Assembly: GCA_036785375.1 (NCBI GenBank)
Contig: JAWMAR010000007.1
Coordinates: 11,098,001-11,162,000 of the forward strand
Reading direction: 5' to 3'
From: Leucoraja ocellata
Taxonomy: Eukaryota
Length of the DNA stretch: 64,000 nt
A program made the position numbers and the translations under genes. Shown here piece by piece: positions 5,677 through 54,504 of the stretch (position 1 is its first letter; each line of letters begins with the position of its first letter). The notes under the pieces are model-generated. The model was not told the origin of the DNA, did not search any database, and saw nothing but the letters and a program-made list of their open reading frames with translations.

Positions 5677-5719
5677 ATGCTGTTCATTTTGCTTTGTGCC
5701 TTTGCACTGCCTGTCACCG
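5677..5719 (+). CDS. Candidate signal-peptide exon MLFILLCAFALPVT, without a canonical phase-1 donor
   Basis: Hydrophobic leader-like ORF upstream of the V exons. The expected donor position reads G|ctaat rather than G|gt. Confidence 0.3.
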
Positions 5720-6478
5720 CTAATCATAAGTATCCTTTAATAAGGAGCAGAAGTTGCTTTTCTGGCTGTTTCACTGTGAATGAAATGATTAACTATATGA
5801 GATAGACATGTGTGTCCGTGGAAACAGAGCAGGATCAGTCTTTTGATGCTGTACTTAAGGTGACAGGCAGTCTTCCAGAAAGGGAATATGTATGTGTGTG
5901 AAGACCTTTAATACAAACATTTTACAATACAGTAAATGATCGGTTTGAGATTATAAGGCTGGAGTCTGAGCAGCAGGGGAGATTGTGTTTAGTTGTCGAC
6001 CCCAGACTTCTGGATGAAGATATTAGCCCTTGAGAGGGGGTGAAGGGCGTTGTGTCCTTGGCATAGTTTAAAAGTGAAGATGATGAGAAATATCTTCACT
6101 GAGAGTAATGCACCTATAGAATTATCGAATTGAAAGTAGTTCAAGCCAAGCCACCTCTTGTCTTCAGCAAGGAGCTGAATATATTCCCAGGCTAAAGACA
6201 TAAAGGGGAATGGGGACAAAGTTCAATTCTGTATTGATTAGCAATTAAGAGCCATAATCATATTGACTGTTGACCAGGCTTGAACAGCCGAATGGCTTCC
6301 TGTGTTGCTCTGAATGTCTTTGCGCTCATTGTTGATTCTGATCCTAATCAAATTGGTTTTGGTTTATTATTGTCACACGTACTGAGGTACAATGAACACC
6401 TGCACCTGGGATAATACCTTTCTCAAAATAACATCTCATATGCGAAGAATGAATCCCCAATCTTCCAATATACCTTGT

Positions 6479-10456: not shown

Positions 10457-10595
10457 TAGTGACGGTTACAAACAGCACAGCAGCATCACAGTTCAACTGT
10501 CTTCCACAAGGGCAGGGACCCAGGGTGGGCGCAGCCTCCTACAGTGACTGTGGCCCTCAGCTCAGTCTTAACGTTACATCTCTGTGTCTTCACAG

Positions 10596-10976
10596 GCTGC
10601 AGTATCAGTGGTTGGACCATGGAGACACCGGACGAGGTGATGGGAAGGAAGGGGAAGCTCGTGGTCCTGTACTGCAAGTTCGCTCACCCTCACCATGAAT
10701 ACAAAGGCAACATCAACATCATCTGGAGAGAGGAGAAGACCCAGATTACCTTTTTCAAATACACAAATTATCCATCAAGCGGCACGTATAAAAATGATAT
10801 TGTGTATAATGTAGGAGCTCGCTACAGACCAATGGGGGACCCTCGGAAGAACGATGCTTCCATAATCATTAATCAGCTGGGAACGACTGATACAAACAAG
10901 ATCCACCACTGTCGTGTTGAGCTCACGGGAAAAGCAGGAAAGTTTGGAAGGTCACATGGGCCTATCACAATATCAG
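10596..10976 (+). CDS. Siglec-15-like receptor, V-set exon 1 (retains the essential Arg)
   Basis: Acceptor tcttcacag|, donor G|gtgag, phase 1-1, 381 nt. WTM..P.EV, LYCKFAHPH.EY.G, IWR, G.PRKND, CRVE and HG correspond to the recalled Siglec-15 motifs WSMQVP, LPCTFTHPH, GNPRRND and CRVE. Confidence 0.85.
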
Positions 10977-11429
10977 GTGAGGAATGATTGTGCTGCAAAC
11001 AAACAATTTGTCTTCCTTCCTGCTTCCTGTGATTCCAATGTTACTGGCATGGCTGGCAATTGTTCAAGCTGCTGACTTGTTGGCTACATCACTGGGAGAT
11101 CATGCCCTGGTTTGACTGTCTAAAATACATCACGTTGCACTAAACTGAATTTAAATCTATTAACCAACCCTCAACCCACTTGCCCCGCTGATCACGATCC
11201 TGCTGTAGTTTTGATAACCATCTTCACTCATAATCCTAATTTCTGCCTTGACCATGATGTCCCGTCACTGTGGAATGGGGTGATGTCATTGCCACATCTG
11301 GCCTGCTGTTATAGTCACATATTATATCTCCTCCAGTTAAGTTTCAGATATTGGTATTGGTTTATTATTGTCTATTGCACTGAGATACAGTGATATTTTT
11401 CCGAGTGCCATCCAGACAAATCATCCCAT

Positions 11430-12160
11430 TGAGGCACTAGAAACTGCAGATGCTGGAACCATGAGCAAAACACAAAGTGCTGAAGACACAGTGGGTCAAG
11501 CAGCATTGGTGGAGGAAATGGACAGGCAATTATCCGGGTCGGTTCCCTTCAAACTGATGGAGTAGTAGGGAGAAAGATGGGAACGGGGCAAAGCTTGCCC
11601 AATGAAAGGTGGATGGAGGTGGGGGGGGGGGGGCACGGGGGAGATGCTTATCAGATGGGTGGAGACAGTGATAATGGCGAGTGGTGAAAAGTGGTAAAAG
11701 GTGTCAGACAAGGAAACAAAATGTAAAGGCGGAGGCAAATGGATGGAATGGGCCAGGGGAGATGGGCAGGTGAAAGACGTGATAGAAGGAACTATGGGAT
11801 TCGAGGATGGGAGATGAATACGGGAGATGAAAGGAGCAGTGTGACAAGGATAATGGGAGCAATGTGTGCACAGTGGGCTGGTGGAGGGGGCGGGGAGGGA
11901 GGTATTACTTGAACTTTGAGAGTTCAGTGTTCATACGGTTGGGTTATAAGTTACACAAGCTGACAGGTGCTGTTCTTCCTGTTTGAGTGTGTTCTCACAC
12001 TGATAATACACAAGGCCAGTGACAGTCAGGTCAGTGTGGGAACAGAAAGAGGAGTTAAAATGCGTCGGAACCAGGAGCTCCAGCAGGCCTTGGCAGACTG
12101 AGCACAAGTATTCATCATATTGGGGACACAGAATGCAATAGATGAGGTTAGAAGAATCAT
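11430..12160 (-). mobile_element. Old Penelope-like remnant (pLTR and GIY-YIG end)
   Basis: GAAACTGCAGATGCTGG pLTR motif and decayed similarity to the 6479-7006 element. Confidence 0.6.
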
Positions 12161-15090
12161 ACCTTAGATGTGTGCATCAGGCACTGTAAAAGATAAAATA
12201 AGCAAAGTGAAGAATGTAGTATGACAGCTACAGTGAAAGTGCTACTAAAGAGTAGTGCAAGCGTTTAACGTGGTAGATTGGAAGATCGCGTAATTCAACC
12301 CTAGCATTTGTGAGGTCCATTCAAGACTCTAACAATAGGTAAGAAGTTGTTCTTCCATCTGGTGGTACCTACTTTCAAGTTTTTGTATCTTCTGGGTGTG
12401 AGAATGTCAGGGTATTAGTTGTCCTTGATAATGTGGTTGCTTTTTCGAGGCAGCATTAAGTGTAGAATGGTGAAACAGAGAATCAAAATTGACCCTGGCA
12501 GATTGGAGAGACAGCATTTGTTCAGGCAGTGTTAGTGAACAGGAAGGGGTAGTCCCTGGTTTTTAAAACAATGCTAAGACTATTACGTGAAATGGGAGAA
12601 GGAGTCAGAACACAGATGCTCGAACCAACTCTCATCCATAAAATCTTGGCTAATTCTGGACCTTGTTCATTCGCTGAGAGATCCCCCAGACAGTGATCTC
12701 CATGAGACCCAGATAAACTGTGGACCTTTGGTTTGAATTTACTCAACTACGTTTTACCCACAGCTTCTGCATAATGTGGATTGTTGATTGTAATCATGTA
12801 TAGTCTTTTCGTTGACTGGTTAGCATGCAATAAAAGCTTTTCACTGTAACTTGGTGCAGGTGACAATAAACTAAACTCTGGGATGGAAAATTCAGTAGGT
12901 TCACAAACATTATTGCAGGGAATTTCTTGACCTCAGTCCTGAATGTCTGACTTCTTTTTCCTTGACATGTGGTTTTTGAATCATAAGCAGGAGGAAATAA
13001 ACTTTCCACAAGTATTTGTGAAATCCATCTATTTCCCAGAGCACTCTGTCCATTGACATCCATCAGTCCCAGTCCCCCTATTCTTTCCACACAATCCCCC
13101 AAATTATTCCAATCAGGTGTGTTTAATAGTCATATGCACTGGGATTAGAACAACACCATTTTTCATTGCTGCAACTTTGCAGGCACATTGATGCAACATA
13201 ATAATACATTTACAACAAACAATAATACAATATCAGTTATACATGGTAATAGCATTTGATTAACATTTGAAGTACTTAGTGCAACCTTATACAAAGTGCA
13301 TAATAGTTTGGTGCAAGAGCCTGATGATGCCACAATGAACCTAAACACAACCAAACTTCAGCACTGATCTGTTATGGACAAATAACGGGATTGCTGAATC
13401 ACAGTTCGGGAGGGAGATCTTTAGTGAAATCAAAACAATCTGTTAAATGGCAAGATTGTCTTCTTGAACCTGGAGGTAAAGGTTCACATTTCCTGAACTT
13501 TCTACCTGGCAGTAGCAACAAGAGGAGATCAAGCCATGTGATACTGTTATATTGGCTGCCCTCTATATTTACTCTCATTCACTTACCAATCAAGTGACCA
13601 CAACAGCCAATCACAGGGCAATCCTGTCCCCAACCGATCATAGATTCCTCCACATTCCCACTTCTCTGCAACATAAAAGACATTTGTTTTATTGTAACTT
13701 TTCCCAGTTCTGATCATCAACCTGACAATCATTTGTTTCTCTCCTGATTTTTTCTATGTCAATGTAGCTATCGTAATCTTGTACTTCATACTTTCATCAT
13801 TGAGCCCAGCGTCTCGCACTTCACTAACCATTGCCTCAATGTGTCACATTTGTTTTAGTTAACTGTGTCTGAGAAGGAGTTTTCCACATGTTCCTTGGCA
13901 TCCTGGAGCATTATTCTAACTATCTTATCTCTCATTTCTGTGTAGGTATTATCACTCGGTGCGTGTCTCTGTTAATTTTTATCTCACACACCTTCTCCAC
14001 CTCTTCATATTCCATCTGCAATCTTCTTATAATTCGATGGAAAATGACCATGTAGTAGAATGCAGTAGAAAATGTAGTAGAGGTATACTACATCGACTGG
14101 ATCCTTCCTTATCAATTCTGTTAGATATATTGTCCACCCTAACCCTAAACTCCACTTAAATTGTCAACAGAACTTCCCCTTCATCAAGAATTAAAACATA
14201 AATTGCTGTAAAATTAATCAGGTCTGAATGCAAGTCAACTGGAGGGGCGATAATATCCATGTAGGACGTTGTGTTGCTGCTACTCAGGAGGGTTTAATCT
14301 AGTTTGTCAGAAGGTTGGGAACTGGAGCAGGTGGAGGAATTGAATGGGATGTAGACATCAGCTTAAGACTGATCAGAAGGGCTGGCGGGGCCGGGTTAAT
14401 GAACGCAGTGGAACTGATGGGCTGAAGTGTGTTTATTTCAATGCTATGTATATTATGTGTAAGGCAGATGAATGTAGAGTTTGCATTAATGCATGGAACT
14501 ATGATGTTGTGGCCATTAGAGTTTTGGTTGAGCGAGGGGGCGAGACTGACACCACAATGTTCCAGGGTTTTAGACATGATTTAGCAGCATTGTAGGTTAT
14601 ATAAAAATGCAACCAGGCCACCTGCAATTACTCTATTCAATTTGATTTGAGAATTCTGCATATTATTTATAAAGAAGATGAAGTTACATTTACAGTTACA
14701 TTTCACCGCTCTAGAGCAGCGCAGGAGGGTCAGGGACAGATGGGTCAGAGTGGGAGTGGGATGGAGAAACATGGTCACAGATGTGTAGGAAGGTGCTGCA
14801 GATGCTGATTTATACCGAAGATAGACACAAAATGCTGGAGTAACACAACGTGCCAGGCAGCATCTATGGAGAAATGGAATAGATTCTACTTCAGGTCTGA
14901 AGAAGGCTTCCATTCACAAACATTACCTACTACTTTTCTCCAGAGATGCCGCATGATCTGCTGAGTTACTCCAGCATTTTGTGTCTATCAACATGGTCAC
15001 AGACACAGGTGAAGTATTGATAAAAATAAATGTGGGTAATGCATCCGACCAATGAATAATGTCCATATTTTAAATCTTTCTCTATCTGAG

Positions 15091-15459
15091 GTGAGGTCAG
15101 CGCATCTATGGTGATCGGGAAGAGAGGAGGTGGTGCCACACTGAACTGCAACTTCAAACACTCGAGTGCAAATAGCAGGGTGATCACTATCCTCTGGATG
15201 AAGGGGACTCCATGGGAAGAGTCCGTTGTCTTTAATCATACCCGCTCCTACGCCACAAGCGGTCCCGGCACTGACAATGTAAATACAGGAGGTCGATATG
15301 AGCTGGTGGGAAACGTAGACAATGGAGACGCCTCCATCAGAGTGAGGGGACTCACATTGAATGACACCAACATCTATTTCTGTCATGTTTGGATCTTTGA
15401 ATCCTCTAAGAAGAAAAATATTCAATTGACTCAGGATGAAACGGGACTACAGGTTTTGG
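15091..15459 (+). CDS. Siglec-15-like receptor, V-set exon 2
   Basis: ATLNCNF, ILWMKG, GRYELVG, GDASIRV, DTNIYFC; donor G|gtaagg; 369 nt. The acceptor at the aligned position is a weak ctgag|. Confidence 0.82.
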
Positions 15460-16211
15460 GTAAGGAAACAGTCAGTGTTGAGAAGTAAATGATAAAATCA
15501 CATTGAACAACTGTGAGAAGAATGAGCTTCGTTCTGTTTCCTCTCTGAATATTTCACTCCATTCTCCCGCTGGGTCTCTTTCAAATCTTCACCCCTTCCT
15601 GGTTCTCCCCCTGCACCAATGAATAACAGTGACTTTTATCCCTCTCTAGGCTACAGCCACCATCTTGGAGCGATGGTGATAATGTATCTGGAGATACGTG
15701 TGTGTGCGGGATGGAATGGACAGGTTGATCATTTCAGCTGCCATTTGTTGAGTCTACTTTCTTGTGATTGGCTTCACTTTCTAGTGGTTAAACATAGATA
15801 AACATCATGTCTAATCTCCATTGTTGGTGTTGATGGGAGAATCATGGGACCTCCAGTGACATTGTTGTCAGCCTCTGGTTCCGGTAATGGGGGAGGGGAG
15901 AAGAGAGAGTAACTCGGGTGTGAGTGATCCTTCATTATGTTGGCTGCTTTCCCAAGGAATAAATGCAGTTGATGGGCGCGGGAACGAGGGAAAACCTTTT
16001 ATTCATTCTACATGGTTAATCCTGAGCTTTCTGGTGCTTGTAATCTTAATCATCCATGCAATTCCCCCTCTGACTATTTTTTGTGACCTCCTTATAACCC
16101 GTCTAATGCAATTTGAAGAACAGGGCTCTCTGCATCATTGCAGACTCAATTGAATTCAAGAATTTTGGATGATACTTTTTCTCTCTTTTATCAGAACTAA
16201 ACAGTTGTACT

Positions 16212-16661
16212 TGTGAGATTCAAAAATCACAAATGCTCTTGAGACAAATTCAGACAAAGAAGTGTTTTTATTAATTTCATATTCTGCAGAATAGGTGTCT
16301 CTCCTCTGATGTCCACTGGAGGCACAAAGAAAATGGAGATGCTTTCTATCTTTATACCCTTCTTCACTATGGCCACTAACTCATGCCTCCCCATCGAGTT
16401 TCGTCCAATCATAACATAAAGCCCACATTCCCACGAGAAAGTCCAGGAATGTCTCCGACCATCTCCTGACGTCAAGACTCCCAAGGCCTTCTGCTGAAGT
16501 TGTTATCTGTTTGCTACTTTTTATCTAGAATTTCTCTCTGTTCTGTATATTGTTACTTTATTCTACCAGCAGTCTGGCTTCTGCGGATAAGCTCATTTCT
16601 TTCTAAGTTATATTTTTCAGAGTTCTAGTATAATTCAACCTCTATTAACCCTTCTCTCACA
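16212..16661 (-). repeat. 3' LTR
   Basis: Direct repeat of 21988-22437; preceded on the minus strand by the purine tract AAAAAGAAAAATGGTGGAT. Confidence 0.95.
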
Positions 16662-17119
16662 ATCCACCATTTTTCTTTTTGCTACGCATCTTTTGAATTA
16701 TACTATATCTTCCTTTTCTAGTGCTAGCAGCAGATTCTTCGCCTCCCTATCCTCCTCTCGCTAGTCATACTGTGTTCTGAAGGCCAGCGCAGGGAATAAT
16801 ACAACATCCGAATAGGCACAAAGTCAATGGTTCCTTCCCTTCAAGCACAGTCTAGGGCTGATATTGTCCGGTGGGGCCTCCACAGGACCCTTAAATCGGT
16901 TAGTCCACCTTTGTTGCAGCTTTTCTTCCTTCCATGATTTTACAAGATCCCAGTTCTCTGCTTTCACAGAATGGATTGGCAAGTCGAGATGGGGACTCTG
17001 TGCCAGCAGCCCCTTGGTTTTTAATTCTGTAATAGAGTGAGATACTGCCAGTAAACAGTTCCTTAAGAAAACATCATTACCATGGTGGGTATTCCTTCTA
17101 TCTTTCCCAAATAATAAAA

Positions 17120-18045
17120 ACCTAACTTGTTCAACCTTTCTCTGTATCTTAGTTGCTGAAACCCAGTCAACATTCTAATTGATCTCCTCTGTACTCTCTA
17201 TTTTAACCTTTTTCCTATAATTATGCCTACCAAAATTATGCACCATACTCCACAATTGACCTCACCAATACCTTGTACAATTTAACATTACAACCCAACT
17301 TCTATACACAATGCTCTGATTTATAAAGGCCAACACACCAAAATCTTTCTTTACCATCCTTTCTACACGAGATTCCACCTTCAGGGAATTGTACACAGTT
17401 GTTCCTAGATCCCTCTGTTCAACTTCATTCCTCAATTCACAATCATTTACCATGTAAGTCTAATTTGAATTTGTCCTGCCAAGTTGTATCACCTCACACT
17501 TATCAACATTAAATCCATCTGTCATGTTTCAACCCAGTCTTCCAAATGACTTAAATCTCTCTGTACATTTTTTAAATCTACTTAATTATTCACAACACCA
17601 CGTATCTTAGTATCATCTACATACTTCTTAATCTATCTTACCACACCAACATCCATATTATTGATTCACATGACAAACAACAGTGGTCCCAACACACATC
17701 CCTGAGGTACCCCTCTAGTCATTGACCTCCAACCTGATAAACATCCATCCACCATTACTCTCTGACATTTCCCAACAGTCACTTTTAATCCATCTTGCTA
17801 TTCCTTACTAACCGCTTCTTAACCAACCTTATAGTATAATTATTGAACTTTGTCAAAGGCCTTACTGAAGTTCACCACTTTAACCTCATCAATTTTCCTA
17901 ATAGCCTCTTTTAAGAAAAATCAAGATTAGTCAAATGTCACAATCACAAATCCATGCTAATTCTTCCTAATCCTATCCCATTTATCCAAATTCCTATAAT
18001 ATTGTCTTTAGTATCCTTTCCATTATTTCCCACCACTGATGTCAA
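17120..18045 (-). mobile_element. Heavily diverged CR1 RT fragment inside the ERV
   Basis: EQRDLG...SLKVES.V...VKK.FG.LAFI on the minus strand. Confidence 0.75.
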
Positions 18046-19789
18046 ACAAGTTCTTGTTAAAACTCTACTCTTCTTTGTCCTCCTGTTCAATTACCTCAGG
18101 GCTATTGTCTATTCGTACCTGTGGGCCAGCCCTCATGTAATTATTGAGATCGTACTAGGTATCTCAACCTTCTAAACGAACATCCGTCGGTGATTTAGAA
18201 AACTCATACATACACCTTGTCTTCAGGTTTAAAGGGTCCTTCTTCCTGGTCCATCTCCGACAGCTTTTACTTTACCTGTTCATAAATAGACTTGTATATC
18301 ATTATTAACGGTTTCATATACTTTTTAAATTCTAATCGGTAACTGTTCCAAACTCGGTCCCTTGCAGGAACTTCCCCATTGTGTCACCTGCTGGTTAGTT
18401 TGCATGCAACATTTCTTCAGTGCCAATGGCAGAGCATTACACAAATCTTATTTATTTTAACCTTCAATGTTCCATTTATTCTTTTCATCAAATGAAAACA
18501 ATCCGTTGTCAAAGCTGATTTTTGTAGGTTTACCAAACCTCTTAATTACCTTATTCAACATAAACGACACTACAGTGCTCATACCTAAATCGATTCAGAC
18601 TTACCCTGGACATCTCTTCCAGATGCTGTTTCAGCTGCTTTGTCTGCATTTTAATTTAACTTCTTTGACATGTACTTTTTCCATTTCACCATACAATTTC
18701 AAAATTCCCAATCTAGTCTGAACTATATCCTACCTTTCCCAAGGTCATCATCTGCTGTCTTATATTCTGAAGTATTTCTCTCTCTTCACTTGTGGAACAA
18801 ACCAACAAATTGTCCACATCAACAAATACTTTCTAAGGGTATACCATATAACCATATATCGAACCTGCCACCACCACCTTCACTGGAAGCTCATTCCACA
18901 CAGCTACCACTCTCTGAGTAAAGAAGTTCCCCCTCAACTCTCAACTCTGCCTTTCCCATCTAATTAAAAAAACCTACCTCATCCTAGCCTTTCTTGACAT
19001 CCTTCCTTAAATCCCTTTCTCTCTCTTGGGGACCCCAGTCCTGTTAGGGCTTATAATCTCCAGATTAATTTCACTCCTGATAGGACTTTGAGGAAAAGTT
19101 CCCCAAGACATGTATTATTGGCATGTAATTCTCTGGCCCCGCTTGGTTCCCTCATAGGACTCACTTGTGTCAGTTCATCACTTATTTCAGTCTTTTCAAC
19201 CAGGGGCCTTGTTCATTGACATTGACCGCAGAAACCAACTGTTTGCTGAATCTGGGGGTTGGAAATAAATGACAATCCCACCACCTCCTTCAATTCTGCT
19301 TGACTTTAAGAAGAATGACTTCCACCACAATAGTTCATAATATAATGTCCACATGCCTTCTTTTTCTTGTTCATTTTCAACTCTCCACCTTTTCATTCCC
19401 CTTTGTTCCTTGGGGTTCACCTTAAGTGGGTAACATTTGCTGAGGGGCCTGCATACCCTCGGTCATGACGGCATCCAACCAGAAGATGGTGCTGTAGCCG
19501 GTAAGTTTGTGAGCGGCGGCCATGTTTGTAGTCTTTTGTCGGCCCGGTTGTAACAATTTACATCATCTTTATCTGACACTTAGTGGTTCCCACTACTTTT
19601 ACCAATGGTGCCTTCAAATCTTTCATGGCCAATAATCGTCCCACGTTCTCCTCCTCCAAAGCCCTAATCCATTTCCTTCTCCATCAGGGATAGAGGGTGA
19701 GGCATTTTTATTTATTATTTATTTTAATTTTTTTATTTTAATTTTTTTAGCCCTCTCAGTTTATGGGTGCCCCAAGGGATAATCTGTCA

Positions 19790-19957
19790 NNNNNNNNNNN
19801 NNNNNNNNNNNNNNNNNNNNNNNNNNNNNNNNNNNNNNNNNNNNNNNNNNNNNNNNNNNNNNNNNNNNNNNNNNNNNNNNNNNNNNNNNNNNNNNNNNNN
19901 NNNNNNNNNNNNNNNNNNNNNNNNNNNNNNNNNNNNNNNNNNNNNNNNNNNNNNNNN
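19790..19957. other. Assembly gap (N run)
   Basis: Run of n. Confidence 1.
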
Positions 19958-20055
19958 CTCTCTCTTTCCTCTCTCTTTCCTCTCTCTTTCCTCTCTCTCT
20001 CTTTCCTCGCTCTTTCCTCTCTCTTTCCTCGCTCTTTCCTCTCTCTGTCTGACTC

Positions 20056-20560
20056 ATAGAAACATAGAAACATAGAAATTAGGTGCAGGAGTAGGCCATT
20101 CGGCCCTTCGAGCCTGCACCGCCATTCAATATGATCATGGCTGATCATCCAACAGTATCCTGTACCTGCCTTCTCTCCATACCCTCTGATCCCCTCAGCC
20201 ACAAGGGCCACATCTAACTCCCTCTTAAATATAGCCAATGAACTGGCCTCAACTACCCTCTGTGGCAGAGAGTTCCAGTCTCTGTGTGAAAAAAACACTC
20301 TCTGTGTGAAAAAAAAGTTCTTCTCATCTCGGTTTTAAAGGATTTCCCCCTTATCCTTAAGCTGTGACCCCTTGTCCTGGACTTCCCTAACATCGGGAAC
20401 AATCTTCCTGCATCTAGCCTGTCCAACCCCTTAAGAATTTTGTAAGTTTCTACAAGTTCCCCTCTCAATCTCCTAAATTCTAGAGAGTATAAACCAAGTC
20501 TATCCAGTCTTTCTTCATAAGACAGTCCTGACATCCCAGGAATCAGTCTGGTGAACCGTC
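20056..20560 (-). mobile_element. Young CR1 3' fragment between CT-rich microsatellites
   Basis: RRFTRLIPGMSGLSYEERLDRLGLYSLE, near-identical to 40815-41305; (CATAGAAA)n tail on the + strand. Confidence 0.92.
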
Positions 20561-21987
20561 TGTATCTCTGTGCCTGGCTCTCTCTCTCTCTCTCTGTCTG
20601 TATCTCTGTGTCTCGGTGTCTGTATCTCTCTCTCTCTCTGTTTCTCAACTTGAATGTCTACCATAAAACAACAAACCATAAAAGCTGGTCATGTTTCATC
20701 AATTAACTTATTTCCAATTATTTCAATCCATATTCACCATTATTTTAAATGTCCAATTCCTAACACTAGATACAATTTTCCAAATTAACGTTACTGACAA
20801 GAAATCTAAAAGAACATCAAGAAACGATTAAAAGAAAATCAAAAGCTGATTTTTACAACTTCCCTTTTTCAGGTTACGAGGATACAAAGGGTTAATTTTA
20901 CAGCTTGTTCGCAATCCAATTTGAACTACAGTGGAAATGCTCGCCCCCGCCACTGTGTTCAATTTTACAACTTGCTCATTCTAACCTTTCATCTTACAAC
21001 CATTCGTTCCAAACCGGTTTTTACATACAAATCACATTCGTTCCGTTCTTACTTCAAATAGATTATTCATTTTATATTTTCTCCCTGTCCTGCACTCTTG
21101 TCCCTGGCCTTTGCCGTCTTCTTATCTGCTAATTTCGGGAGTAACTCCCTCATCATCCTGTCTCTCTCTGTTCCTTATTTGCTGTTTTTCTACTGCCTGC
21201 AACATAATCTTTACTACTTGTTTTTCACTTCTGTGAAAAGGAATTGATCTAACTGTTCTTGTCAGACCTAAAGAATCTTCAAGGAGGCTATTTAACAAAC
21301 CCCCTTCCCCCTCAGGGTCCTCTCCTAGGTACCTCCCTCGGGGGTCTAATTTCAACCGAACTTATCTTCCCCTTCTGCCCTTTGACTCCCCGTCCTATTG
21401 GCCGGGTGATCTTCGTCCACCCCGGCCCCTGTCTCTCTGTTCCTTTGGGTATTTTGGCCCCCTCCGGCTCTGCATTTGTCCCAACGGACTATACCTTATC
21501 ATGTTGGCTTCTCCAACCCCTGGGTATTTCCTGCCCTCCAGGGTCCAGCATTTGCCCCAACGGACTATTGGGCAGAATGCGGGGATTTGGCCCACAGCCT
21601 TTTCCCCTCCCTTTTTCTAAACACCGTGTTTAATTACCTTATTTATCATCATCATATTCTTAATACCATGTTCATCATATTCTCAATACAGTGTTCATCA
21701 TACCTGCCTTGCCCGTACAAGGTCTTTCCACAATCGCCCAGGAAGTACTTTATTAGTCATTGTTCCTACCTGGGTTCTGTGCACAGAAATTGCTCGATTG
21801 ATTTTTCACGATGTCCAACTACTCCCACTTCTTTGCCGAGTCTCTGTGTGGTCCGGATACTACTGCTTAAACAGCTGATGGCAAGCAAGGAGTCTGAGAC
21901 TGCTGAACTCAGCAGGGTGCACCTTCCCTTTGTCCGTCTACTCCCGTCAGCTGTCTAGAGTATTGGATCCCGGACGAGCCCCCAAGT

Positions 21988-22437
21988 TGTGAGATTCAAA
22001 AATCACAAATGCTCTTGAGACAAATTCAGACAAAGAAGTGTTTTTATTAATTTCATATTCTGCAGAATAGGTGTCTCTCCTCTGATGTCCACTGGAGGCA
22101 CAAAGAAAATGGAGATGCTTTCTATCTTTATACCCTTCTTCACTATGGCCACTAACTCATGCCTCCCCATCGAGTTTCGTCCAATCATAACATAAAGCCC
22201 ACATTCCCACGAGAAAGTCCAGGAATGTCTCCGACCATCTCCTGACGTCAAGACTCCCAAGGCCTTCTGCTGAAGTTGTTATCTGTTTGCTACTTTTTAT
22301 CTAGAATTTCTCTCTGTTCTGTATATTGTTACTTTATTCTACCAGCAGTCTGGCTTCTGCGGATAAGCTCATTTCTTTCTAAGTTATATTTTTCAGAGTT
22401 CTAGTATAATTCAACCTCTATTAACCCTTCTCTCACA
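21988..22437 (-). repeat. 5' LTR
   Basis: Followed on the minus strand by the tRNA-Pro PBS. Confidence 0.95.
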
Positions 22438-23404
22438 TACTGAAGATAAGCAAAATGGAATATTAATCAGTTATTCTCTGAACAATTATTGTAACTTAAA
22501 ATAAGTTAGCTGAAGTTGCAGAGGTTGTATAGAGGGGTGGATTAGAAATAGGAAATATCTCTGAAAGGGTGAGTCTACGTTTGCTGTTGATGAAATTATC
22601 TGGTTGATAAATTAAGGAAGGAAATTGGAGACCGAGAACACAAACAAAGATAGAAACAGAGCTGCAAAACGTACGTCAGCTGCAAGAAACACGCTGCAGA
22701 TCAGGCAGCGTCAGTGGAGAGAGGAGAACTGAGTCAGTATTGCAGATGGATAACCTGCTGCAGAACTTCTGATACAAACAGCGAGAAAGTTACCAGAAAT
22801 TGTTGTATTCAATGTTGACTCAATGGTTCAATGGGTCAACCGTGAATAGAACAATTTCTGGTGACTTGCTCGCTGTTTGTGTCAGAACTGGCGAGTTCTA
22901 CAGCATCTGCGACACTGACTCAGTTCTCCTGAAAAAGAATCACGACCCGAAACGTCACCGATTCATTCTATCCAGAGATGCTGCCTGCCTGCTGAATTAC
23001 TCCAGCATTTTGTGTCTATTTTCGGTTCAATGGTTTCTTTATTATCACATGTAGCAAGTACAGTGAAATACTATTTTGCATACAGATCAGTAAGAATATC
23101 ACCGTACATAAATAAGTACAATCCCCCCGGTTAGTACATCATGTACAGAAGAACCCACTGAGTCTGGGCAACAGTTGCCATTTTGCACCATTTTACAGTC
23201 CTCGATGCAGTTGCCACAGAGGCCCCATTGCAGCCGCCGCCTCCATTCCAGTTGTCCTGGAATGTTGACCCTCACCCTGGACAGTCCTATTCAGCCCTTC
23301 TTCCCCAGGGGTGGTGTGCGGTGGGGGGGGCTCCTCCTGCAGAGGAGATTAGGGAACGGAAGTTAAAAACTCCTCCACCCCGCCTGATTCCGTTAACCAG
23401 GCAT

Positions 23405-24330
23405 TTTCAGGTTGGCTGCCAGTTACTAGCAGAGTTCCGCAGGGCTCGGTGCTGGGGCTGCTGCTCTTCACGTTGTATATTAATGATTTGAATGAGGGGA
23501 TTGACGGCTTTGTGGCCAAGTTTGCGGATTATACGAAAATAGGTGGATGGGCAGGTAGTGCAGAGAAAGCAGGGTCTCTGCAGAAGAACTTGGATAGGTT
23601 GGGAGAGTGGGCAGAGAAGTGGCAGATGGAAAGGTGTGGAAAAGTGTGGAGTCATGTATTTTGGTAATAGGATTAAAGGCGTTGGTTACTTTTTAAATGG
23701 GGAGAGAATCCAGAAATCGGAGGTGCAAGGTGACTTGAGAATGCTGGTGCAGGATTCACAAAAAGTTAATCTGCAAGTCAAATCAGTTATAAAGAAAGCA
23801 AACGCAATGCTAGCATTTATTTCGAGAGGGTTTATATGCAAAAGTAGGGATGTAATGCTGAGAATCTTTCAGGCGCTGGTCAGGCCACATTTGGAATATT
23901 GTGAGCAATTTTAGGCACCATATCTGAGGAAGGATGTGCTGGCTCTGGAGAGGGTCCAGAGGAGGTTCACAAGAATGATCCTAGGAATGAGTAGGATAAC
24001 ATCAGATGAATATTTGACGGCACTGGGCCTATGTTTGCTGCAGTTTAGAAGAATGAGGGAGGGCGACATTGAAACAGACAGAATAGTGAAAGGCTTGGAT
24101 GTGGAGAGGATGCTTCCACTAGTGGGAGAGTTGAAGACGAGAGGTTTTAGCCTCAGAATTAAAGGACGTTCTTTTAGGAAGGAGATGAGGATGAATTTCT
24201 TTGGTATGAGGGTGGTGAATCTATGGAATTCATTGCCACAGATGGCTGTGGAGGCAAAGTCAGTGGATATATTTAAGGCAGAGATAAGTAGATTCCTGAT
24301 TAGTGCAGATGTCAGAGGTAATGAGAAGTG
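23405..24330 (+). mobile_element. CR1 RT fragment
   Basis: LFTLYINDL...KFADYTKIGG; LVRPHLEYC. Confidence 0.88.
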
Positions 24331-24675
24331 CTTCGGGTGCAGAACCTAAGACACCCCCCCCCCCCCCCCGCCCCCCCCCCCCCCCCCCCCCACCCCACCT
24401 AATTCAGTTAACCGCGCCTTTAGTCATCCTCCATCCTCCTCTCCGGTTCCTGGTCTTCAAGGTCAAGGCTCCATCCTGGCCAGACAGAAACTGAGATGTC
24501 ATTACTTGAGATTGGCCCTTATTAGCATAGTGCAGGTCAGGAACAGGTGGATCAGAGTAGGAATGGGATGGAGAATCCAAGTCACAAGTATGGATGAACT
24601 ATTGATAAAGACTGTGTGGTTATTGTATTCAATTACTAAATCATATTCACACTTTAAAACTCTTCTCTCTGCAAG

Positions 24676-25037
24676 TTGATAATGACAGAGCATCCATGGT
24701 GATTGGGAGGAAGGGTGCGACTGCCACATTGCCCTGCTCCTTCAGTCCCTCGAACAAGAATCCCAGCTCCATCACCATCAAGTGGATGAAGAGGAATCCA
24801 CCAAAATGGTCTGTTGTCTTTCGTGACACTTCTCCCCCCCAGCAGCAAATCACATTCCTGAAAATGTAAATAAAGGAAATCGATATGAGCTGGTGGGAAA
24901 TCTTACGCAGGGAGATGCATCCATCAGAGTGAAGGGACTCAAACTGAATGACGCCAGTGATTACTCCTGTCACGTTTATGTCAGGAATTCAACATTGACG
25001 ACTGTAACTCAGGATGAGTTGAAACTGCAGGTTGTGG
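24676..25037 (+). CDS. Siglec-15-like receptor, V-set exon 3 (1-nt frameshift in the C run at 24834-24840); absent from the ORF track
   Basis: Acceptor ctctgcaag|, donor G|gtaagg. MVIGRKGATATLPCSF...IKWMK, then after the shift NRYELVGNLTQGDASIRV...DASDYSCHVY...LKLQVV. 362 nt against 363 nt for V4. Confidence 0.85.
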
Positions 25038-25104
25038 GTAAGGAAACGTGTGTTATGCTGTAAACGATAATATCATATTGAACAACCTTAGGAGGAATGA
25101 GCTC

Positions 25105-26130
25105 CCACTGACAGTGTAGACCAGCACAGGAACAGGCCCTTTGGCCCGCAATGTCTGTACCGAACATGATGCTACGTTAATCTTGTCTACCTGCAGGTGA
25201 TACATTTCTTCCATTACCTGCATTTCAAAAAGTCTCTAAAACTCCACTATCGTAGCTGCCTCCACCACCCCTAACAGTATTTTCCTGGCACCCACCACCT
25301 TCTGTGTAAACAATAACTTTCCCCACATATCTCCTTTCATCTTATCACATCTGTCCTTGTCACAATACCGTCTATTCGTTGACATTTCCGCCGTAGGCAA
25401 AAGGTTCTCTCTCTCCTATCCATGTCTTTCATATTTTTATAAACTTTCAACAGTCGAGAGAAACAGTTCAAGTATGTCCGACCTTTTCTTCTAACTAATA
25501 CCCTCTAATCCAGGCAGCAATCTGCTAAACCTCTTCTGAACCCTTTCCAAAGTCTCCTCATCCTTCCTGTAATGGGTAAAAACTGCACATAAAACTGAAT
25601 GCAATAATCCCAGTAACTAAAGTTGTATAGAGCTACAACATGACTTCCTGACTCTTGTATTCAGTAAATAGACACTAAAAGCTGGAGTAACTCACCGGGA
25701 CAGGTAGCATCTCTGGAGAGAAGGAATGGATGATGTTTCGGGTCAAGTATCTTCTTCTTGACCTGAAACGTGACACATCCTTTCTCTCCAGAGATGCTGC
25801 CTGTCCCGCTGAGTTACTCCAGCTTTTTGTGTCCATCTTCGGTTTTAACCAGCATCTGCAGTTCCTTCCTACACATCTTGTATTCAGTACCTTGGCCAAT
25901 GAAAGCAAGAATACTGTACACGTTTTTAACGTGTTGCCATTTTCAAGCAGTTATGGAATTGGATCCCAATATTTTTCTGTACATCAGTGGTATTAAGGGA
26001 CTTGCCCTTGTATATTTTCCACTTGCATTCAACCTCCCAAAGACAACACTTCACATATGTTCGGATCAAACTCCATCTGCCATTTCTCTGCCTATATCTG
26101 TATTAGATCAACATTTGTAGTATCTTTCGA
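25105..26130 (-). mobile_element. Old CR1 3' fragment with a nested Penelope-derived short element (~25665-25875)
   Basis: GGAACAGGCCCTTTGGCCC CR1-type tail; inverted CTGGAGTAACTCA / TGAGTTACTCCAG pLTR-like motifs. Confidence 0.6.
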
Positions 26131-26430
26131 CAGTTCTACGTTCATCTGTCTTCCTCATGATACTCTTGCATTGTCAATAAGCAACACTACAGCCCATGTG
26201 TGGGTTTGATATTTGAGCTGCCACTTATGTGGACTGCACTCTTACGATTGGCTTCACTTTCTCATGTTTGAACAGAGGTGAACGCCACTGTCTCATCTCC
26301 AATGTTAGTGTTGACGGGGAGACTTGTGGCATCTCCAGTGATATTGTCATCAGCCTCTAGCTATGGTGGTTTGGGTCAGGTAATATTGACTTTTGAGGCA
26401 GTTCTGGCCAGTTCTTATACTTAACAGTAA

Positions 26431-27090
26431 AGGGCTTGTCCCACTTAGGTGATTTTTTAGGCGACTGCCGGTGACTGTCATGGTCGTAGCAGGTTGCCGA
26501 AAAACGGGTGACTGGACCCCCCCCTACGACAATGTCTACAACAACATACAACCTAGTCGACGTTAAGCCATGACAACCGGCGACTCAATCGTCACGACTT
26601 AGGACGTCCACCTACGACCACACCTAGACAACCCTACGACCACACAGGTGACAACCTACGAGTCAAACGACCTCCCACCCGCGACAAGCTACGACAAGCT
26701 ACCACCCTGTCGGTGACAATTGAAGACTTCTCTTGACGCCGGTAGTTGTCGCCGGTTGACGCAGGTTGACGTAGGTAGTCCCCAAATGAATTCATCGAAG
26801 TCAGCACCAGCGACAACATACATCATCCTGGCAACAACCTATGTTATCCTGGCGACAACTTACGACAGCACCTACGTCAGGAGAAGACAAGCTACGACAA
26901 GCCCAAGATCGCTGAGTGTCGCCAAAAAGATTTGAACATTACAAAATCCTGCGGCGACCAGAAAAACGCTACGGATCTTTGGGCGACTTGAGGAGACGAC
27001 TCACGACCCTACATGTGACACCCGGCAACCGTGTGGTGACCGCCTAGTTACCTGTTGTCGCCTAATAATCGCGTAAGTTGGACAGGCCCT
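26431..27090. mobile_element. PIF/Harbinger-type MITE
   Basis: Imperfect TIRs AGGGCTTGTCCCACTTA / TAAGTTGGACAGGCCCT with a TAA duplication on both sides; non-coding CGAC-rich interior. Confidence 0.85.
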
Positions 27091-27323
27091 TAAGCAAGTT
27101 ATTGAAATTGTTGTATTAAATGTTAACACAAAAGCTTCATGCTGCCCAGACAGAAGATGAGGTGCTGTTGCTTGAGATTGGGCCTCGTTAGAACAATGCA
27201 GGAGGTCTGAGACAGACAGATCAGAGCGGGAGTGGGATGGGGAATCAATGTCACAGGCATGGATGATGTATTTTTATAAACCATGTGGAATAGATTGTTA
27301 AATACAACTTTTCTCTATACAAG

Positions 27324-27686
27324 ATGGAAAGAAGAACACATCGATGGTGATTGGGAACAGAAGAGATTCAGCCACACTGCCCTGCTCCTTCAGCCCCTTG
27401 AACAAGAATCCCAGCCCCATCACTGTCCGCTGGATGAAGGGGAATCCACGGGAAGAGTCCACAGTCTTTAATCACACCCACCCCCAATCTGTGAACCCTC
27501 CCTCCACTGTCACTGTAAAGGGAGGAGGTCGATATAAGCTGGTGGGAAAACTAGACCAGGGAGACGCCTCTATCAGCGTGAAGGAGCTCAGACTGGACGA
27601 CAGCAGTGACTATTTCTGTTACGTTTGGGTCAGGAATTCCACACAGGAGACGGTGACTCAGGATGAGACTAAACTGGAGGTTGTGG
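27324..27686 (+). CDS. Siglec-15-like receptor, V-set exon 4
   Basis: Acceptor ctctatacaag|, donor G|gtaagg. ATLPCSF, VRWMKG, GRYKLVG, GDASISV, DSSDYFC, TKLEVV; 363 nt. Confidence 0.88.
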
Positions 27687-28336
27687 GTAAGGAAATATCT
27701 ATCTGTGTTGTCCTTGTGAACGATAAAATCACATTAACAACTGTAAGAGGACATGAGATCCACTGACAGCTGGAGCCGAGATCAGCCCAATCCATTGTAG
27801 GTTCCATTCCTTGCCCTGGGCTTCCCTTGCTCAGCACTGCCCCTAGTGGTTGGAAAACAGTGCTGATTCCAGCCAGGATGCATGGAGCTCCCTGTAGCAG
27901 GATCAGAGATTCAGAACCATATTCACCAGCTGAACCTCCAGTCCCTGTGTCTGTGACATGGTCTGTGTTACAAAGATCCACAGACAGCCCTGGGGTATCA
28001 TCCATCTCTTTCATTCACATTGACTCCGGGATCCTGTATGTTCTCTCACTGAATATTACATAGAACAGTACAGCACAGGACCAGGCCCTTTGGCCCGCAA
28101 TATCTGTGCAGAATATAATGGTTCTGTAAGTTAAACTAATATCATCTGCCGATACATGATCCATATCCCTCCATTCCCTGTAGATCCATGTGCTTCTCAA
28201 AGACACTGTCATATCTGCAAATATTTCACTGCAGTCTCCTAGATGTGTCCTTCCAATCCCCATTCAGATGGAGTTTATCTGCACACACCAACAGTGATTA
28301 ATTCAATGAATTTAATACATTTCTTCCTTCTCCAAG

Positions 28337-28708
28337 TCCCAGCCACCATCCTGGAGCTGTTCGTTGTGAGCGACAATGTAACTGGAGAAGCCACCCTTGT
28401 GTGCAGGGCTGAAGGGAAGCCCCCTGCAAACATCGTGTGGATCAGCCCAGGGAACGGCTCCATGCCCGTGAACATTAGTGAGATGATAGTCACACATGAT
28501 CCAGAGAAACTACTGACTGTGGGAGAGCTGCTTCACCTCAGGCTGCCAGGGAAATACACGTGTGTGGCTGAGAATGAACACCAGATAGACACGCGTGAGA
28601 TCCGCCTTTTCGAGGATGGACGAAGTGATGAAGTGTTGGCCATTCGGGCTGCCATTTATGCCGTCTATTTTGTTATAATTGGCCTCACATTCTGCTGGTT
28701 GAAGAGAG
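28337..28708 (+). CDS. Siglec-15-like receptor, C2-set domain plus transmembrane exon
   Basis: Acceptor ttctccaag|, donor G|gtgaac. LVCRAEGKPPANIVW...GKYTCVAEN...IRLF resembles the recalled Siglec-15 CTAEGEPPPALAW...GRYTCTAAN...VYLF. TM reads VLAIRAAIYAVYFVIIGLTFCWL, followed by KR. Confidence 0.88.
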
Positions 28709-29701
28709 GTGAACGTCTCCATCTCAGCTCCATTGCCGGTGTCAACAGGAGGGATGCTGCACCTCCAGTGACAGTGTCAGGTTCTTTTGTTGTGGATCAG
28801 GCTGTGTAACTTCGGAGATAAACAATGCTCCATTCCCGCAGCTATGACCGTGTGTCTGTGGGGTACATGCAGCTGTCCTCACGTCAGTCCGACTCAGCGG
28901 CCCCTCCCTCAGTAGTGTATCCGATACTTTTGCTACTGCATTGCTGCTGATTCCGGCATCCACATAGAACTCAAATTTCACATGGCTCTTAGCTGTCTCC
29001 CTTCATCCTAAACTATGGCTTAATCTCTACATTAGCTGACCGTGGCCTTGGCAGCTTTGAATAGCTTTTCCCTGATCCTCATTTCCCACCACTAGTCTCT
29101 GCATTCAGTGGATCAACCTTTATAGCTTCTGTTACCATCGGTGCTGGCACACCAACAGACACATCTTCCACCTGCCTACACTTTCGGCATCCGGAAGGGT
29201 CCTTTCCCTTTGCGACTCCATCATCTGCTCTTCCATTCCATTCAACCATTTACTCGGAACAGTGCATGGTGTAGCTTTCCAGGCTAGACTGTGCAATCAA
29301 CAATATTGGTGAGCTCACTTTCTCTGTCTGTGTCAAAGCTGGTCAGATGTGTTGTAGATAATCCATCTGCATTATGAACTTGTTTTCCTCTCTCTACGGG
29401 CACGGCCTGATCTGTGGCCATCTCCTGTAGCTCTGGCTTGCTTTTGCAGTTTCTACATGCTCTCTTTCTAACTGCCCAGATAGCTTTGTCAATCATTTAT
29501 TACTATGGAAACCAGGCCTTTCCCTATATGTCATTCCTTTTCGCTCTCTCTATGTCACTCTTTCTGCGCCAACAATCTTTTTTATTGTCTCAGCTATTCA
29601 ATCAGAAGCATGAACTCTTTCTCTCTGCACAGATGCCGCCCTGACCTGTTGAGTATCCTCTGCACTCTGGAGAAACATTCCCTTTTCCTTGCGGATCACA
29701 G

Positions 29702-54300: not shown

Positions 54301-54504
54301 GTTTATACCTAAAAGACAATCATCTAACAATCTGAGACGCCTTTTTAATATAATGTATTCATACAAAACGGAAAAGGAAGATTTATCAGTTATATCTTTG
54401 GATGCAGAGAAAGCATTTGATCAGGTAGAATGGCAGTATTTATACAAAGTACTCCAAAAATTTAATATGGGAGACAATTTTATTAGATGGGAAAAATTAC
54501 TATA

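What the first reader, a model, noticed from the sequence alone, without database searches (positions are those of the whole stretch)
10596..28708. Siglec-15-like receptor with an atypical V-V-V-V-C2-TM architecture
Seen: five phase-1/phase-1 Ig exons that join in frame (once one base is restored in V3), ending in a single C2+TM exon. Established: Siglec-15 has one V-set and one C2-set domain, and Siglecs generally carry a single N-terminal V-set domain. V1 and the C2 exon match recalled Siglec-15 motifs and lack the CD33-type extra cysteines. Inference: this is a cartilaginous-fish Siglec-15-derived receptor that lengthened by adding V domains rather than C2 domains, possibly an undescribed family. 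The symmetric exons would also allow modular or alternative splicing.
Basis: partly seen in the sequence, partly recalled or inferred. Interest (0 to 1): 0.85.

Follow-up and report, generated by a model that had tools for sequence, protein, structure and literature searches.

The report
Skate Siglec-15-like receptor, four V domains
This is a skate or ray gene related to the sialic-acid receptor Siglec-15 that carries four V-type immunoglobulin domains instead of one, a layout also seen in unnamed gene models of other cartilaginous fishes but in none of the papers I could search.

Summary
Five phase-1 Ig exons lie where stated: V1 10596-10976, V2 15091-15459, V3 24676-25037 (one base short), V4 27324-27686 and C2+TM from 28337. 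I also found a leader exon at 5677.

The assembly gap lies in the V2-V3 intron, inside an insertion bounded by two identical repeats, so no reading frame crosses it.

V1 is Siglec-15-like: human Siglec-15 is by far its best solved match, and the sialic-acid Arg is kept. V2-V4 are three copies of a second V type (V') that sits between V1 and C2 in Siglec-15-like gene models of sharks, rays and a chimaera.

NCBI models from two other skates chain V1-V2-V3-V4-C2: Amblyraja LOC116971578 and Leucoraja LOC129695366. Decayed C2/TM remnants after V2 and V3 show the locus grew by duplicating [V'+C2TM] units.

The TM carries an Arg and the tail is short. This copy therefore looks like the activating partner of an ITIM-bearing four-V relative.

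Caveats:
- No RNA was found for this gene itself.
- The leader's expected donor reads AT.
- V3 is frameshifted here, although contigs of three other runs carry the missing C.

Verdict: real, a new variant of a known kind, present in databases but not found in print.

The parts
5677..5729 (+). Leader (signal peptide) exon, starting at ATG 5677. Its 3' end is uncertain: the donor expected from the Amblyraja models, after 5725, reads AT. A GT at 5730 gives phase 2 and pairs in frame with a second AG at 10601-10602.
   Evidence: tblastn of P0006, P0171 and P0175. The 16-aa leader is 94% identical to the Amblyraja models. Sequence read. There is no second copy in the window.
10596..10976 (+). V1 exon: a Siglec-15-type V-set domain with Trp, both framework Cys and the strand-F Arg.
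15091..15459 (+). V2 exon: a V'-type V-set domain with an open frame and His after the strand-F Cys.
15650..15870 (+). Decayed remnant of a C2+TM exon behind V2. Most of the C2 part is deleted and there are several stops.
16212..22437 (-). Insertion in the V2-V3 intron, bounded by two identical 450-nt TG...CA repeats with a 4-base target duplication. It contains the assembly gap 19790-19957 and is not part of the gene product.
24676..25037 (+). V3 exon: V'-type, 362 nt. The frame is broken in a run of seven C at about 24833-24839. Contigs of three other runs carry one more C.
26187..26382 (+). Decayed remnant of the TM/tail part of a C2+TM exon behind V3.
27324..27686 (+). V4 exon: V'-type with an open frame and Tyr after the strand-F Cys.
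28337..28809 (+). Last exon: C2-type Ig domain, a TM helix with an Arg about 5 residues in, and a short tail without a Tyr motif, up to the stop at 28807-28809. A possible donor lies at 28708/28709.

Best explanation
The stretch 5677-28809 (+ strand) is one transcription unit of a chondrichthyan Siglec-15-like receptor family. Its exon order is leader, V1, V2, V3, V4, then one exon encoding C2 + TM + short tail.

V1 is the Siglec-15-type domain that keeps the sialic-acid Arg and would sit at the tip. V2-V4 are three Arg-less, N-glycosylated copies of the family's second V type (V'). They most likely act as a stalk that lifts V1 from the membrane, the role C2 domains play in other Siglecs (inferred).

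The three V' exons arose by tandem duplication of a [V' + C2TM] unit in the skate lineage. The two upstream C2TM copies then decayed, which left their V' exons in phase inside the gene.

The Arg in the TM helix and the short tail without a tyrosine motif suggest signalling through an ITAM adaptor (inferred). This would make the gene the activating partner of an ITIM-bearing four-V relative such as Leucoraja LOC129695366.

Whether this particular copy is still functional in this genome is open.
For: - Exon anatomy and phases and Pfam domains.
- There is a single leader in the window and there are no further V exons.
- V1's best solved match is human Siglec-15, with Cys-Arg aligned to C142-R143 (passages of PMC10264397).
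- In a 57-row domain tree, V1 falls in a 15-row clade of first domains (support 99/94). V2, V3 and V4 each pair with domains 2, 3 and 4 of Amblyraja P0005 (100/100, 100/100, 100/97), so the triplication predates the split of the two skates.
- Gene models chain the same exons: P0005 V1-V2-V3-V4-C2, P0170 V1-V2-V3-V4-C2-TM-ITIM, P0171 leader-V1-V2-V3(part), P0174 V1-V2-V3(part), P0172 V3-V4-C2-TM, P0173 V2(part)-V4-C2-ArgTM-tail.
- The odd C-terminus of P0005 aligns weakly to the window's Arg-TM region.
- C2TM remnants with stops lie right behind V2 and V3, while V2 keeps its frame and V3 keeps it but for the one missing base; both keep both splice sites.
- The window's ectodomain exons are 86% (V1), 90% (V2), 83-94% (V3), 97% (V4) and 89% (C2) identical to ITIM-bearing P0170. 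The TM/tail is 86% identical to the Arg-TM models of Rhinoraja.
- A spliced contig of run X20 joins 27323-27686 directly to 28339-28618.
Against: - No RNA of this gene itself was found. No listed run is on record as RNA. The one spliced contig stops matching at 28618, exactly where ITIM-type P0170 departs from the window, so it probably comes from the inhibitory relative. X20 has no cover on V3 or on the TM part.
- None of the 5 Arg-TM models (P0001, P0002, P0003, P0173, P0180), nor P0008, the same TM type with Trp in place of the Arg, contains V1 or a signal peptide.
- V3 is frameshifted in the window, and the leader's expected donor is AT.
- dN/dS among V2, V3 and V4 is high (0.53-0.96). A simulation shows that 13-20% of neutral copies would keep an open frame at 0.15-0.2 substitutions per site, so constraint on V2 and V3 is not proven.
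- Gene models are predictions whose RNA support I could not see.
Confidence: 0.65

Rival explanations
1. The architecture is as described, but this copy is a young pseudogene, or a null allele, of the activating partner. It would be disabled by the leader-donor change (GT to AT) and by the one-base loss in V3.
For: There are two independent possible lesions. No protein that the window itself encodes appeared among the 27 hits to P0005, which would fit annotation as a pseudogene. The Amblyraja counterpart P0005 ends in a degenerate, truncated TM-like stretch, and P0171 leaves V3 right after the same '...VVFRDT'. From recall only: activating members of paired Siglec pairs are often lost.
Against: V1, V2, V4 and the C2TM exon are all open, with intact splice sites. 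The V3 break is in a homopolymer, a classic assembly-error site. All 3 DNA-type runs that cover it show the extra C: X1 413 of 413 depth, X2 249 of 320, X8 16.8 of 16.8. A GT four bases downstream of the lost donor pairs in frame with a second AG in V1. A skipped V3 would also stay in frame.
Confidence: 0.3
2. V2 and V3 are relics of dead tandem gene copies that the spliceosome skips. The product would be the family's standard V1-V'-C2-TM, built from V1, V4 and the last exon.
For: Decayed C2TM remnants sit next to V2 and V3. V3 is frameshifted here. dN/dS is near 1 for V2 against V4. X20 holds V4-C2 but nothing on V3. P0173 joins a V2-type exon directly to a V4-type exon, and most chondrichthyan models have a single V'.
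Against: V2 and V3 keep consensus AG/GT sites and phase 1. Each has a one-to-one counterpart in Amblyraja and Leucoraja models at 83-94% identity, and those models include them.
Confidence: 0.15
3. There are two genes. The first would be a leader-V1(-V2-V3) unit, perhaps secreted. The second would be a V4-C2-TM gene whose own leader was missed.
For: All Arg-TM models start inside a V' exon. P0171 and P0174 end within V3.
Against: There is no second leader in the window. The Arg-TM models lack any signal peptide, so they are truncated rather than complete. P0005 and P0170 run from V1 through to C2. All exons share one strand and phase 1.
Confidence: 0.08
4. The exon chain is an assembly artefact: two unlinked contigs were joined at the gap.
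For: A gap lies between V2 and V3, and identical 451-nt repeats lie on both sides of it.
Against: The repeats are the two ends of one insertion with matching 4-base target copies, so the flanks belong together. Similarity between the two sides does not extend beyond the 451 nt, so they are not overlapping haplotigs. Independent assemblies of two other skates give the same exon order.
Confidence: 0.03

Closest known systems
Siglec-15 of bony vertebrates (human, PDB 7zoz)
   Same: V1 is its closest solved relative (E 1.1e-14). Trp, the B- and F-strand Cys and the sialic-acid Arg are aligned. The V' profile and the V4 model also rank it first, by small margins. Both are type I receptors with a basic residue in the TM and a short tail.
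   Different: Human Siglec-15 has one V and one C2; this gene has four V and one C2. The TM residue is Arg near the outer end, not the mid-helix Lys. V1 lacks the second disulfide C95-C104. The C2 exon is only weakly similar (E 0.0019).
Leucoraja erinacea LOC129695366 isoform X3 (P0170) and Amblyraja radiata LOC116971578 (P0005), both 'uncharacterized' NCBI models
   Same: They share the V1-V2-V3-V4-C2 order. Identity to P0170 is 86% (V1), 90% (V2), 83-94% (V3), 97% (V4) and 89% (C2). Identity to P0005 is 74% (V1), 88% (V2), 92% (V3) and 92% (V4). V2, V3 and V4 each pair with the matching P0005 domain in the tree.
   Different: P0170 continues from C2 into a separate uncharged TM and an ITIM-like tail. 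The window fuses C2 to an Arg-TM and a short tail. P0005 ends in a degenerate TM-like stretch. V3 is intact in both models.
[quoted passage not shown]
   Same: They show the family ground plan of leader-V1-V'-C2. The window's V4 and C2 are 74% and 73% identical to those of P0177.
   Different: They have a single V'. The TM is a separate exon with Lys, and no such exon is in the window. V1 is only 53% identical. In 9 of 11 such models the Arg is replaced by Leu.
Paired activating/inhibitory Siglecs of primates (Siglec-5/14, Siglec-11/16; recalled, not tested)
   Same: Both show near-identical ectodomains on an ITIM-bearing form and on a form with a charged TM and short tail. The activating partner is prone to loss.
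   Different: The primate pairs belong to a different Siglec subfamily, have one V followed by C2 domains, and lie in a different lineage. Adjacency of the partner in this genome rests on an unchecked note (s1-884800).

Membership tests
Siglec-15 (as defined in bony vertebrates) | The N-terminal V-set domain is closest to the Siglec-15 V domain. | tested here: met
   7zoz_A scores E 1.1e-14 and the next best hit (myelin P0) 3e-4, among 18 sequences at E <= 1.
Siglec-15 (as defined in bony vertebrates) | A strand-F Arg (R143) directly after the framework Cys (C142). | tested here: met
   V1 Cys-Arg aligns to chain positions 123-124 of 7zoz. C64-C142 and R143 come from passages of PMC10264397. 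V2, V3 and V4 have His, His and Tyr there.
Siglec-15 (as defined in bony vertebrates) | An ectodomain of one V-set and one C2-set domain. | tested here: not met
   There are four V exons and one C2 exon.
Siglec-15 (as defined in bony vertebrates) | A Lys inside the TM helix for DAP12/DAP10 (PMC7226832, passages). | tested here: not met
   The TM has one Arg about 5 residues from its outer end and no Lys inside. The Lys-TM exon of relatives has no match in the window.
Siglec-15 (as defined in bony vertebrates) | A second disulfide (C95-C104) in the C'-C'' region. | tested here: not met
   V1 has Cys only at its first residue and in strands B and F.
Siglec-15 (as defined in bony vertebrates) | A C2 domain closest to Siglec-15 domain 2. 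| tested here: inconclusive
   7zoz aligns at 166-235 but only at E 0.0019, below many I-set proteins.
Siglec-15 (as defined in bony vertebrates) | Sialic-acid-dependent binding. | not testable with these tools
   This needs a recombinant V1-Fc and its Arg mutant.
Siglec-15 (as defined in bony vertebrates) | Conserved gene neighbourhood. | not tested
   The rest of the window holds mainly retrotransposon ORFs. No neighbour genes were identified.
Chondrichthyan Siglec-15-like V1-V'-C2 family (operational, from public gene models) | A first domain within the V1 clade. | tested here: met
   a 15-row clade with support 99/94.
Chondrichthyan Siglec-15-like V1-V'-C2 family (operational, from public gene models) | A V'-type domain (conserved GDAS...Y.C.V...QD..L.V pattern) between V1 and C2. 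| tested here: met
   One search shows 24 invariant columns over 9 sequences from 7 species plus the window. Searches agree.
Paired activating/inhibitory immune receptors | An ectodomain nearly identical to an ITIM-bearing partner encoded nearby. | tested here: inconclusive
   Identity to ITIM-type P0170 is 83-97%. Whether P0170's gene is in this genome and adjacent was not testable; only note s1-884800 suggests it.
Paired activating/inhibitory immune receptors | A charged TM residue and a short tail without a tyrosine motif. | tested here: met
Paired activating/inhibitory immune receptors | Physical association with an ITAM adaptor. | not testable with these tools
   This needs co-expression and pull-down.

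The most novel reading that the evidence does not exclude
Cartilaginous fishes, and at least one lungfish, hold an undescribed branch of the Siglec family. In it the Siglec-15 ectodomain grows by amplifying V-set exons rather than C2 exons. The same V1-V'(n)-C2 module is plugged onto three signalling ends: Lys-TM, Arg-TM and ITIM tail.

In elasmobranchs the Lys-TM 'true' Siglec-15 has mostly lost the sialic-acid Arg. The expanded Arg-TM/ITIM paired receptors keep it, so sialic-acid sensing would have moved to the new multi-V paired family, of which this locus is the activating four-V member.
Probability: 0.35. Interest if true: 0.7.

Novelty: new variant of a known kind. Interest (0 to 1): 0.55.

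Why it matters
Textbook Siglecs have one V-set domain followed by C2 domains, and Siglec-15 is regarded as a conserved two-domain receptor. Here a Siglec-15 relative is built from one lectin-type V and three further V domains. The locus still shows how it got there: unit duplication followed by death of the spare C2TM exons.

Together with the related models, this points to a paired activating/inhibitory family in the oldest jawed vertebrates. The finding gives a concrete set of constructs (V1 alone, V1-V4, the Arg mutants) to test when sialic-acid-based self-recognition and paired signalling arose.

Tried and rejected
- Reaching Siglec-15 of bony vertebrates with the V1 part of P0010: only 4 batoid proteins were found among 22 candidates. 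The link to Siglec-15 therefore rests on the solved-structure searches.
- A U12-type intron for the leader: the GT at 5730 is followed by letters that fit the recalled U12 donor motif. The only branch-site-like motif before V1 lies about 24 and 31 bases from the two AGs, too far by what I recall. Not adopted.
- Identical 451-nt repeats as a haplotig or assembly duplicate: rejected. Similarity ends abruptly, and the copies have TG...CA ends and a shared 4-base target copy. None of the 6 internal ORFs tested matched a Pfam family, so the element looks non-autonomous.
- Further V exons or a second leader in the window: none found.
- Constraint from paralogue dN/dS and from a neutral simulation: weak.
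- RNA runs: none on record; only a guessed RNA run, kept as contigs.
- Papers: searches returned 3, 15, 6, 5 and 3 papers. None, by listing, concerns Siglec-15 domain architecture in cartilaginous fish. I read passages only of PMC7226832, PMC10264397 and PMC8455134. Supplementary file 9 of PMC8455134, which lists Siglec gene families, was not seen and might catalogue these genes. Angata 2007 and a 2018 review of Siglec evolution are recalled, not seen.
Full report
**What is there.** Translation of the stated places shows five Ig-type exons on the + strand. Their borders are AG and GT, and every exon starts two bases before a codon and ends one base into a codon (phase 1 on both sides). The exons are V1 10596-10976, V2 15091-15459, V3 24676-25037, V4 27324-27686 and C2+TM 28337-28708. 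Lengths are 381, 369, 362, 363 and 372 nt, so only V3 is out of register, by one base. Its frame changes within a run of seven C at about 24833-24839. Pfam finds V-set in V2 (E 1.5e-15), V4 (3e-14), the two V3 halves (5.8e-05 and 2.3e-06) and V1 (2.3e-05; 25 bits against a 26-bit cut-off). It finds Ig_3, I-set and C2-set_2 in the last exon. A profile made from the four V exons, run over all 1269 open stretches of the window, hits only these exons.

**The gap, tested first.** N runs lie at 19790-19957 and 36230-36429. The first is in the 9.2-kb intron between V2 and V3, between AT-rich and CT-rich simple repeats. A self-comparison showed two 100% identical 451-nt copies at 16211-16661 and 21987-22437, with no similarity beyond them. 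They begin TG and end CA, and the four bases outside them are the same (TACT). They are therefore the two ends of one young insertion that contains the gap. On the minus strand, next to 21987, lies a stretch that I recall as a tRNA-Pro primer-binding site (recalled, not tested). None of the 6 internal ORFs tested matched a Pfam family. The two sides of the gap thus belong to one element, the join is supported, and no frame crosses it. The same exon order in two other skates' assemblies agrees (see below). I did not fill or look up the N stretch.

**What the domains are.**
- V1's best solved relative is human Siglec-15 (7zoz_A, E 1.1e-14; next is myelin P0 at 3e-4). The Trp, the strand-B Cys and the strand-F Cys-Arg are aligned. 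Passages of PMC10264397 name C64-C142 and R143 on strand F as the sialic-acid salt bridge, and a second disulfide C95-C104. V1 lacks that second pair.
- V4 alone also ranks Siglec-15 first (5.7e-07; TIM-3 follows at 1.8e-05).
- V2 ranks it third (4.7e-07, after a triple-VH chain and JAML).
- A profile of nine V' domains ranks it first (1.3e-14), with JAML close behind (4.2e-13).
- An AlphaFold model of V4 (mean pLDDT 78.6) has 7zoz_A as its best Foldseek match (E 4.4e-09, TM 0.80), again by a narrow margin.
- The C2 exon matches Siglec-15 domain 2 only weakly (E 0.0019), below many I-set proteins.
- After the strand-F Cys, V2, V3 and V4 have His, His and Tyr. V2-V4 carry 2, 2 and 3 N-glycan sequons and V1 none.

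**Relatives.**
- The last exon finds batoid proteins that NCBI names Siglec-15.
- V4, run against 1.84 billion representatives, gives 227 hits at E <= 0.001. The best ones have several matched stretches.
- Their names and sequences show a family whose ground plan is leader-V1-V'-C2-TM. It occurs in rays, sharks and a chimaera: Mobula, Hypanus, Pristis, Leucoraja, Rhinoraja, Heptranchias, Heterodontus, Cetorhinus, Chiloscyllium, Rhincodon, Mustelus and Callorhinchus (heuristic table).
- Models with three or more V domains:
  - Amblyraja P0005: V1-V2-V3-V4-C2
  - Leucoraja P0170: V1-V2-V3-V4-C2-TM-ITIM
  - Amblyraja P0171 and Rhinoraja P0174: V1-V2-V3(part)
  - Heptranchias P0178: V1-V'-V'-C2-TM-ITIM
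  - Callorhinchus P0164 and P0165: three or two V1, then V'
  - Lungfish P0009: seven V1-type domains, each with Cys-Arg, then C2 and TM
- Three signalling ends occur: a separate Lys-TM exon, an Arg-TM fused to C2, and uncharged TMs with ITIM-like tails.
- No Lys-TM exon is in the window.

**Tree.** I built a tree of 57 V domains. It held the 4 window exons plus 53 slices from 24 proteins. Left out were slices covering fewer than 85 of 119 profile positions, the third and later domains of P0009 and P0011, and all other stored proteins. The tree puts V1 with the Amblyraja V1s (100/99) inside a 15-row clade of first domains (99/94). It pairs V2, V3 and V4 with domains 2, 3 and 4 of P0005 (100/100, 100/100, 100/97), all within a batoid V' group (91/81). 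The V' triplication therefore predates the split of these skates.

**Identities**.
- To P0170: V1 86%, V2 90%, V3 94% and 83% (its two halves), V4 97%, C2 89%.
- TM/tail: 86% to the Rhinoraja Arg-TM models.
- To the Lys-TM Siglec-15 of Leucoraja (P0177): V1 53%, V4 74%, C2 73%.

**How the locus was built.** Right behind V2 (15650-15870) and behind V3 (26187-26382) lie remnants of the C2+TM exon. The first keeps the acceptor and the opening codons, has lost most of C2 and carries stops. The second keeps only the TM/tail part. The locus thus grew by duplicating a [V' + C2TM] unit twice. The upstream C2TM copies died, while their V' exons kept both splice sites. V2 also kept an open frame, and V3 did so but for the one base it lacks here.

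One leader exon (ATG at 5677) was found with the Amblyraja models, and no second one.

Constraint is not proven. dN/dS is 0.96 for V2 against V4, 0.67 for V2 against V3, and 0.53 for V3 against V4. In a stop-only simulation, 982 and 639 of 5000 neutral copies stayed open at 0.15 and 0.2 substitutions per site.

**Reads.** None of the 22 runs listed is on record as RNA, and the best run holds 0.51 of the sampled words. I laid four runs (all Logan contigs) on 24400-29300.
- An extra C behind 24833 is seen in X1 (413 of 413 depth), X2 (249 of 320) and X8 (16.8 of 16.8). X20 has no cover there. In those samples V3 is therefore in frame. They differ from the window by about 1-3% (up to about 6% in the first half of C2), so they may be another population, another species or a close paralogue.
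- X20, guessed to be RNA, holds a 2306-nt contig lying on 27323-27686 and then directly on 28339-28618. This is V4 spliced to C2 at the predicted borders.
- That contig then runs on unlike the window, at the point where ITIM-type P0170 also leaves the window (28620). It probably comes from the inhibitory relative. It shows that the junction is used, not that this gene is expressed.

**State of this copy.** The donor expected from the Amblyraja models, after 5725, reads AT. A GT four bases on gives phase 2 and pairs in frame with a second AG at 10601-10602; that splice would drop the first Cys of V1. Together with the V3 break, this makes a young pseudogene or null allele a serious rival (0.3). 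Against it, the other exons are intact and the V3 break is in a homopolymer.

**Mechanism.**
- Shown: a type I receptor with a Siglec-15-type V1 bearing the Arg, three Arg-less glycosylated V', one C2, a TM with one Arg near its outer end, and a short tail without a tyrosine motif.
- Inferred: V1 binds sialic acids. V2-V4 act as a stalk. The TM Arg recruits an ITAM adaptor. The gene is the activating partner of an ITIM-bearing four-V relative.
- All exons are symmetric, so exon skipping stays in frame. Isoforms that differ by one V exon are modelled in Heptranchias and Callorhinchus.

**Novelty.** Five literature searches gave no paper on this architecture. PMC7226832 treats fish Siglec15 as a Lys-TM receptor with the conserved Arg and does not mention cartilaginous fish. 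The sequences are public as predicted models, mostly 'uncharacterized'. I rate the finding a new variant of a known kind.

**Limits.** The RNA support of the gene models could not be seen.

Noticed in passing
window 16212-22437 (minus strand): A young insertion with two 100% identical 450-nt TG...CA terminal repeats and a TACT target duplication. A stretch beside 21987 is, from recall, a tRNA-Pro primer site. None of the 6 internal ORFs tested matched a Pfam family, so the element is probably non-autonomous. It holds the assembly gap and a LINE fragment (20046-20561, 93% identical to 40811-41317).
   Followed up: partly
window 5725-5740 and 10560-10603: The leader donor expected from the Amblyraja models reads AT instead of GT. 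The next GT (5730) is followed by letters that match the recalled U12-type donor motif, and it pairs in frame with a second AG in V1. The branch-site-like motif before V1 is too far away for a U12 intron by what I recall.
   Followed up: partly
stored proteins, V1 strand F: In 9 of 11 Lys-TM 'Siglec-15' models of cartilaginous fishes, Leu stands at the sialic-acid Arg position (Arg is kept in Callorhinchus P0021 and Mustelus P0183). In contrast, 12 of 16 models without a Lys-TM, and the window, keep Arg.
   Followed up: partly
P0009 (Protopterus annectens LOC122808572, 1128 aa): A lungfish model with seven tandem Siglec-15-type V domains, each with Cys-Arg and the extra Cys pair, followed by one C2 and a TM. 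Multi-V Siglec-15 relatives are therefore not confined to cartilaginous fish.
   Followed up: partly
window 10598-10600: V1 starts with an extra Cys just before the conserved Trp. It is shared with one Amblyraja model (P0006) but absent in the shark, ray and chimaera models seen. It is unpaired within the domain, and it would be dropped if the alternative acceptor at 10603 is used.
   Followed up: no
P0171 (Amblyraja LOC116971577), residues about 340-386: This model leaves V3 right after '...VVFRDT', within two codons of the window's C-run frameshift, and continues with sequence that has no match in the window.
   Followed up: partly
window 28309-28688: Contigs of other runs differ from the window more in the first half of the C2 exon (13 of 212 letters in X1; 15 plus 8 gap letters of about 350 in X8) than in the TM/tail part (2 of 204 in X1).
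   Followed up: no
window 8974-9654, 23449-24349, 38410-41209, 52684-56813: The introns and the downstream half of the window are full of LINE-type reverse-transcriptase and endonuclease ORFs (RVT_1, E 2.1e-10, for 8974-9654). A second assembly gap lies at 36230-36429, in a proline-rich, low-complexity stretch.
   Followed up: partly
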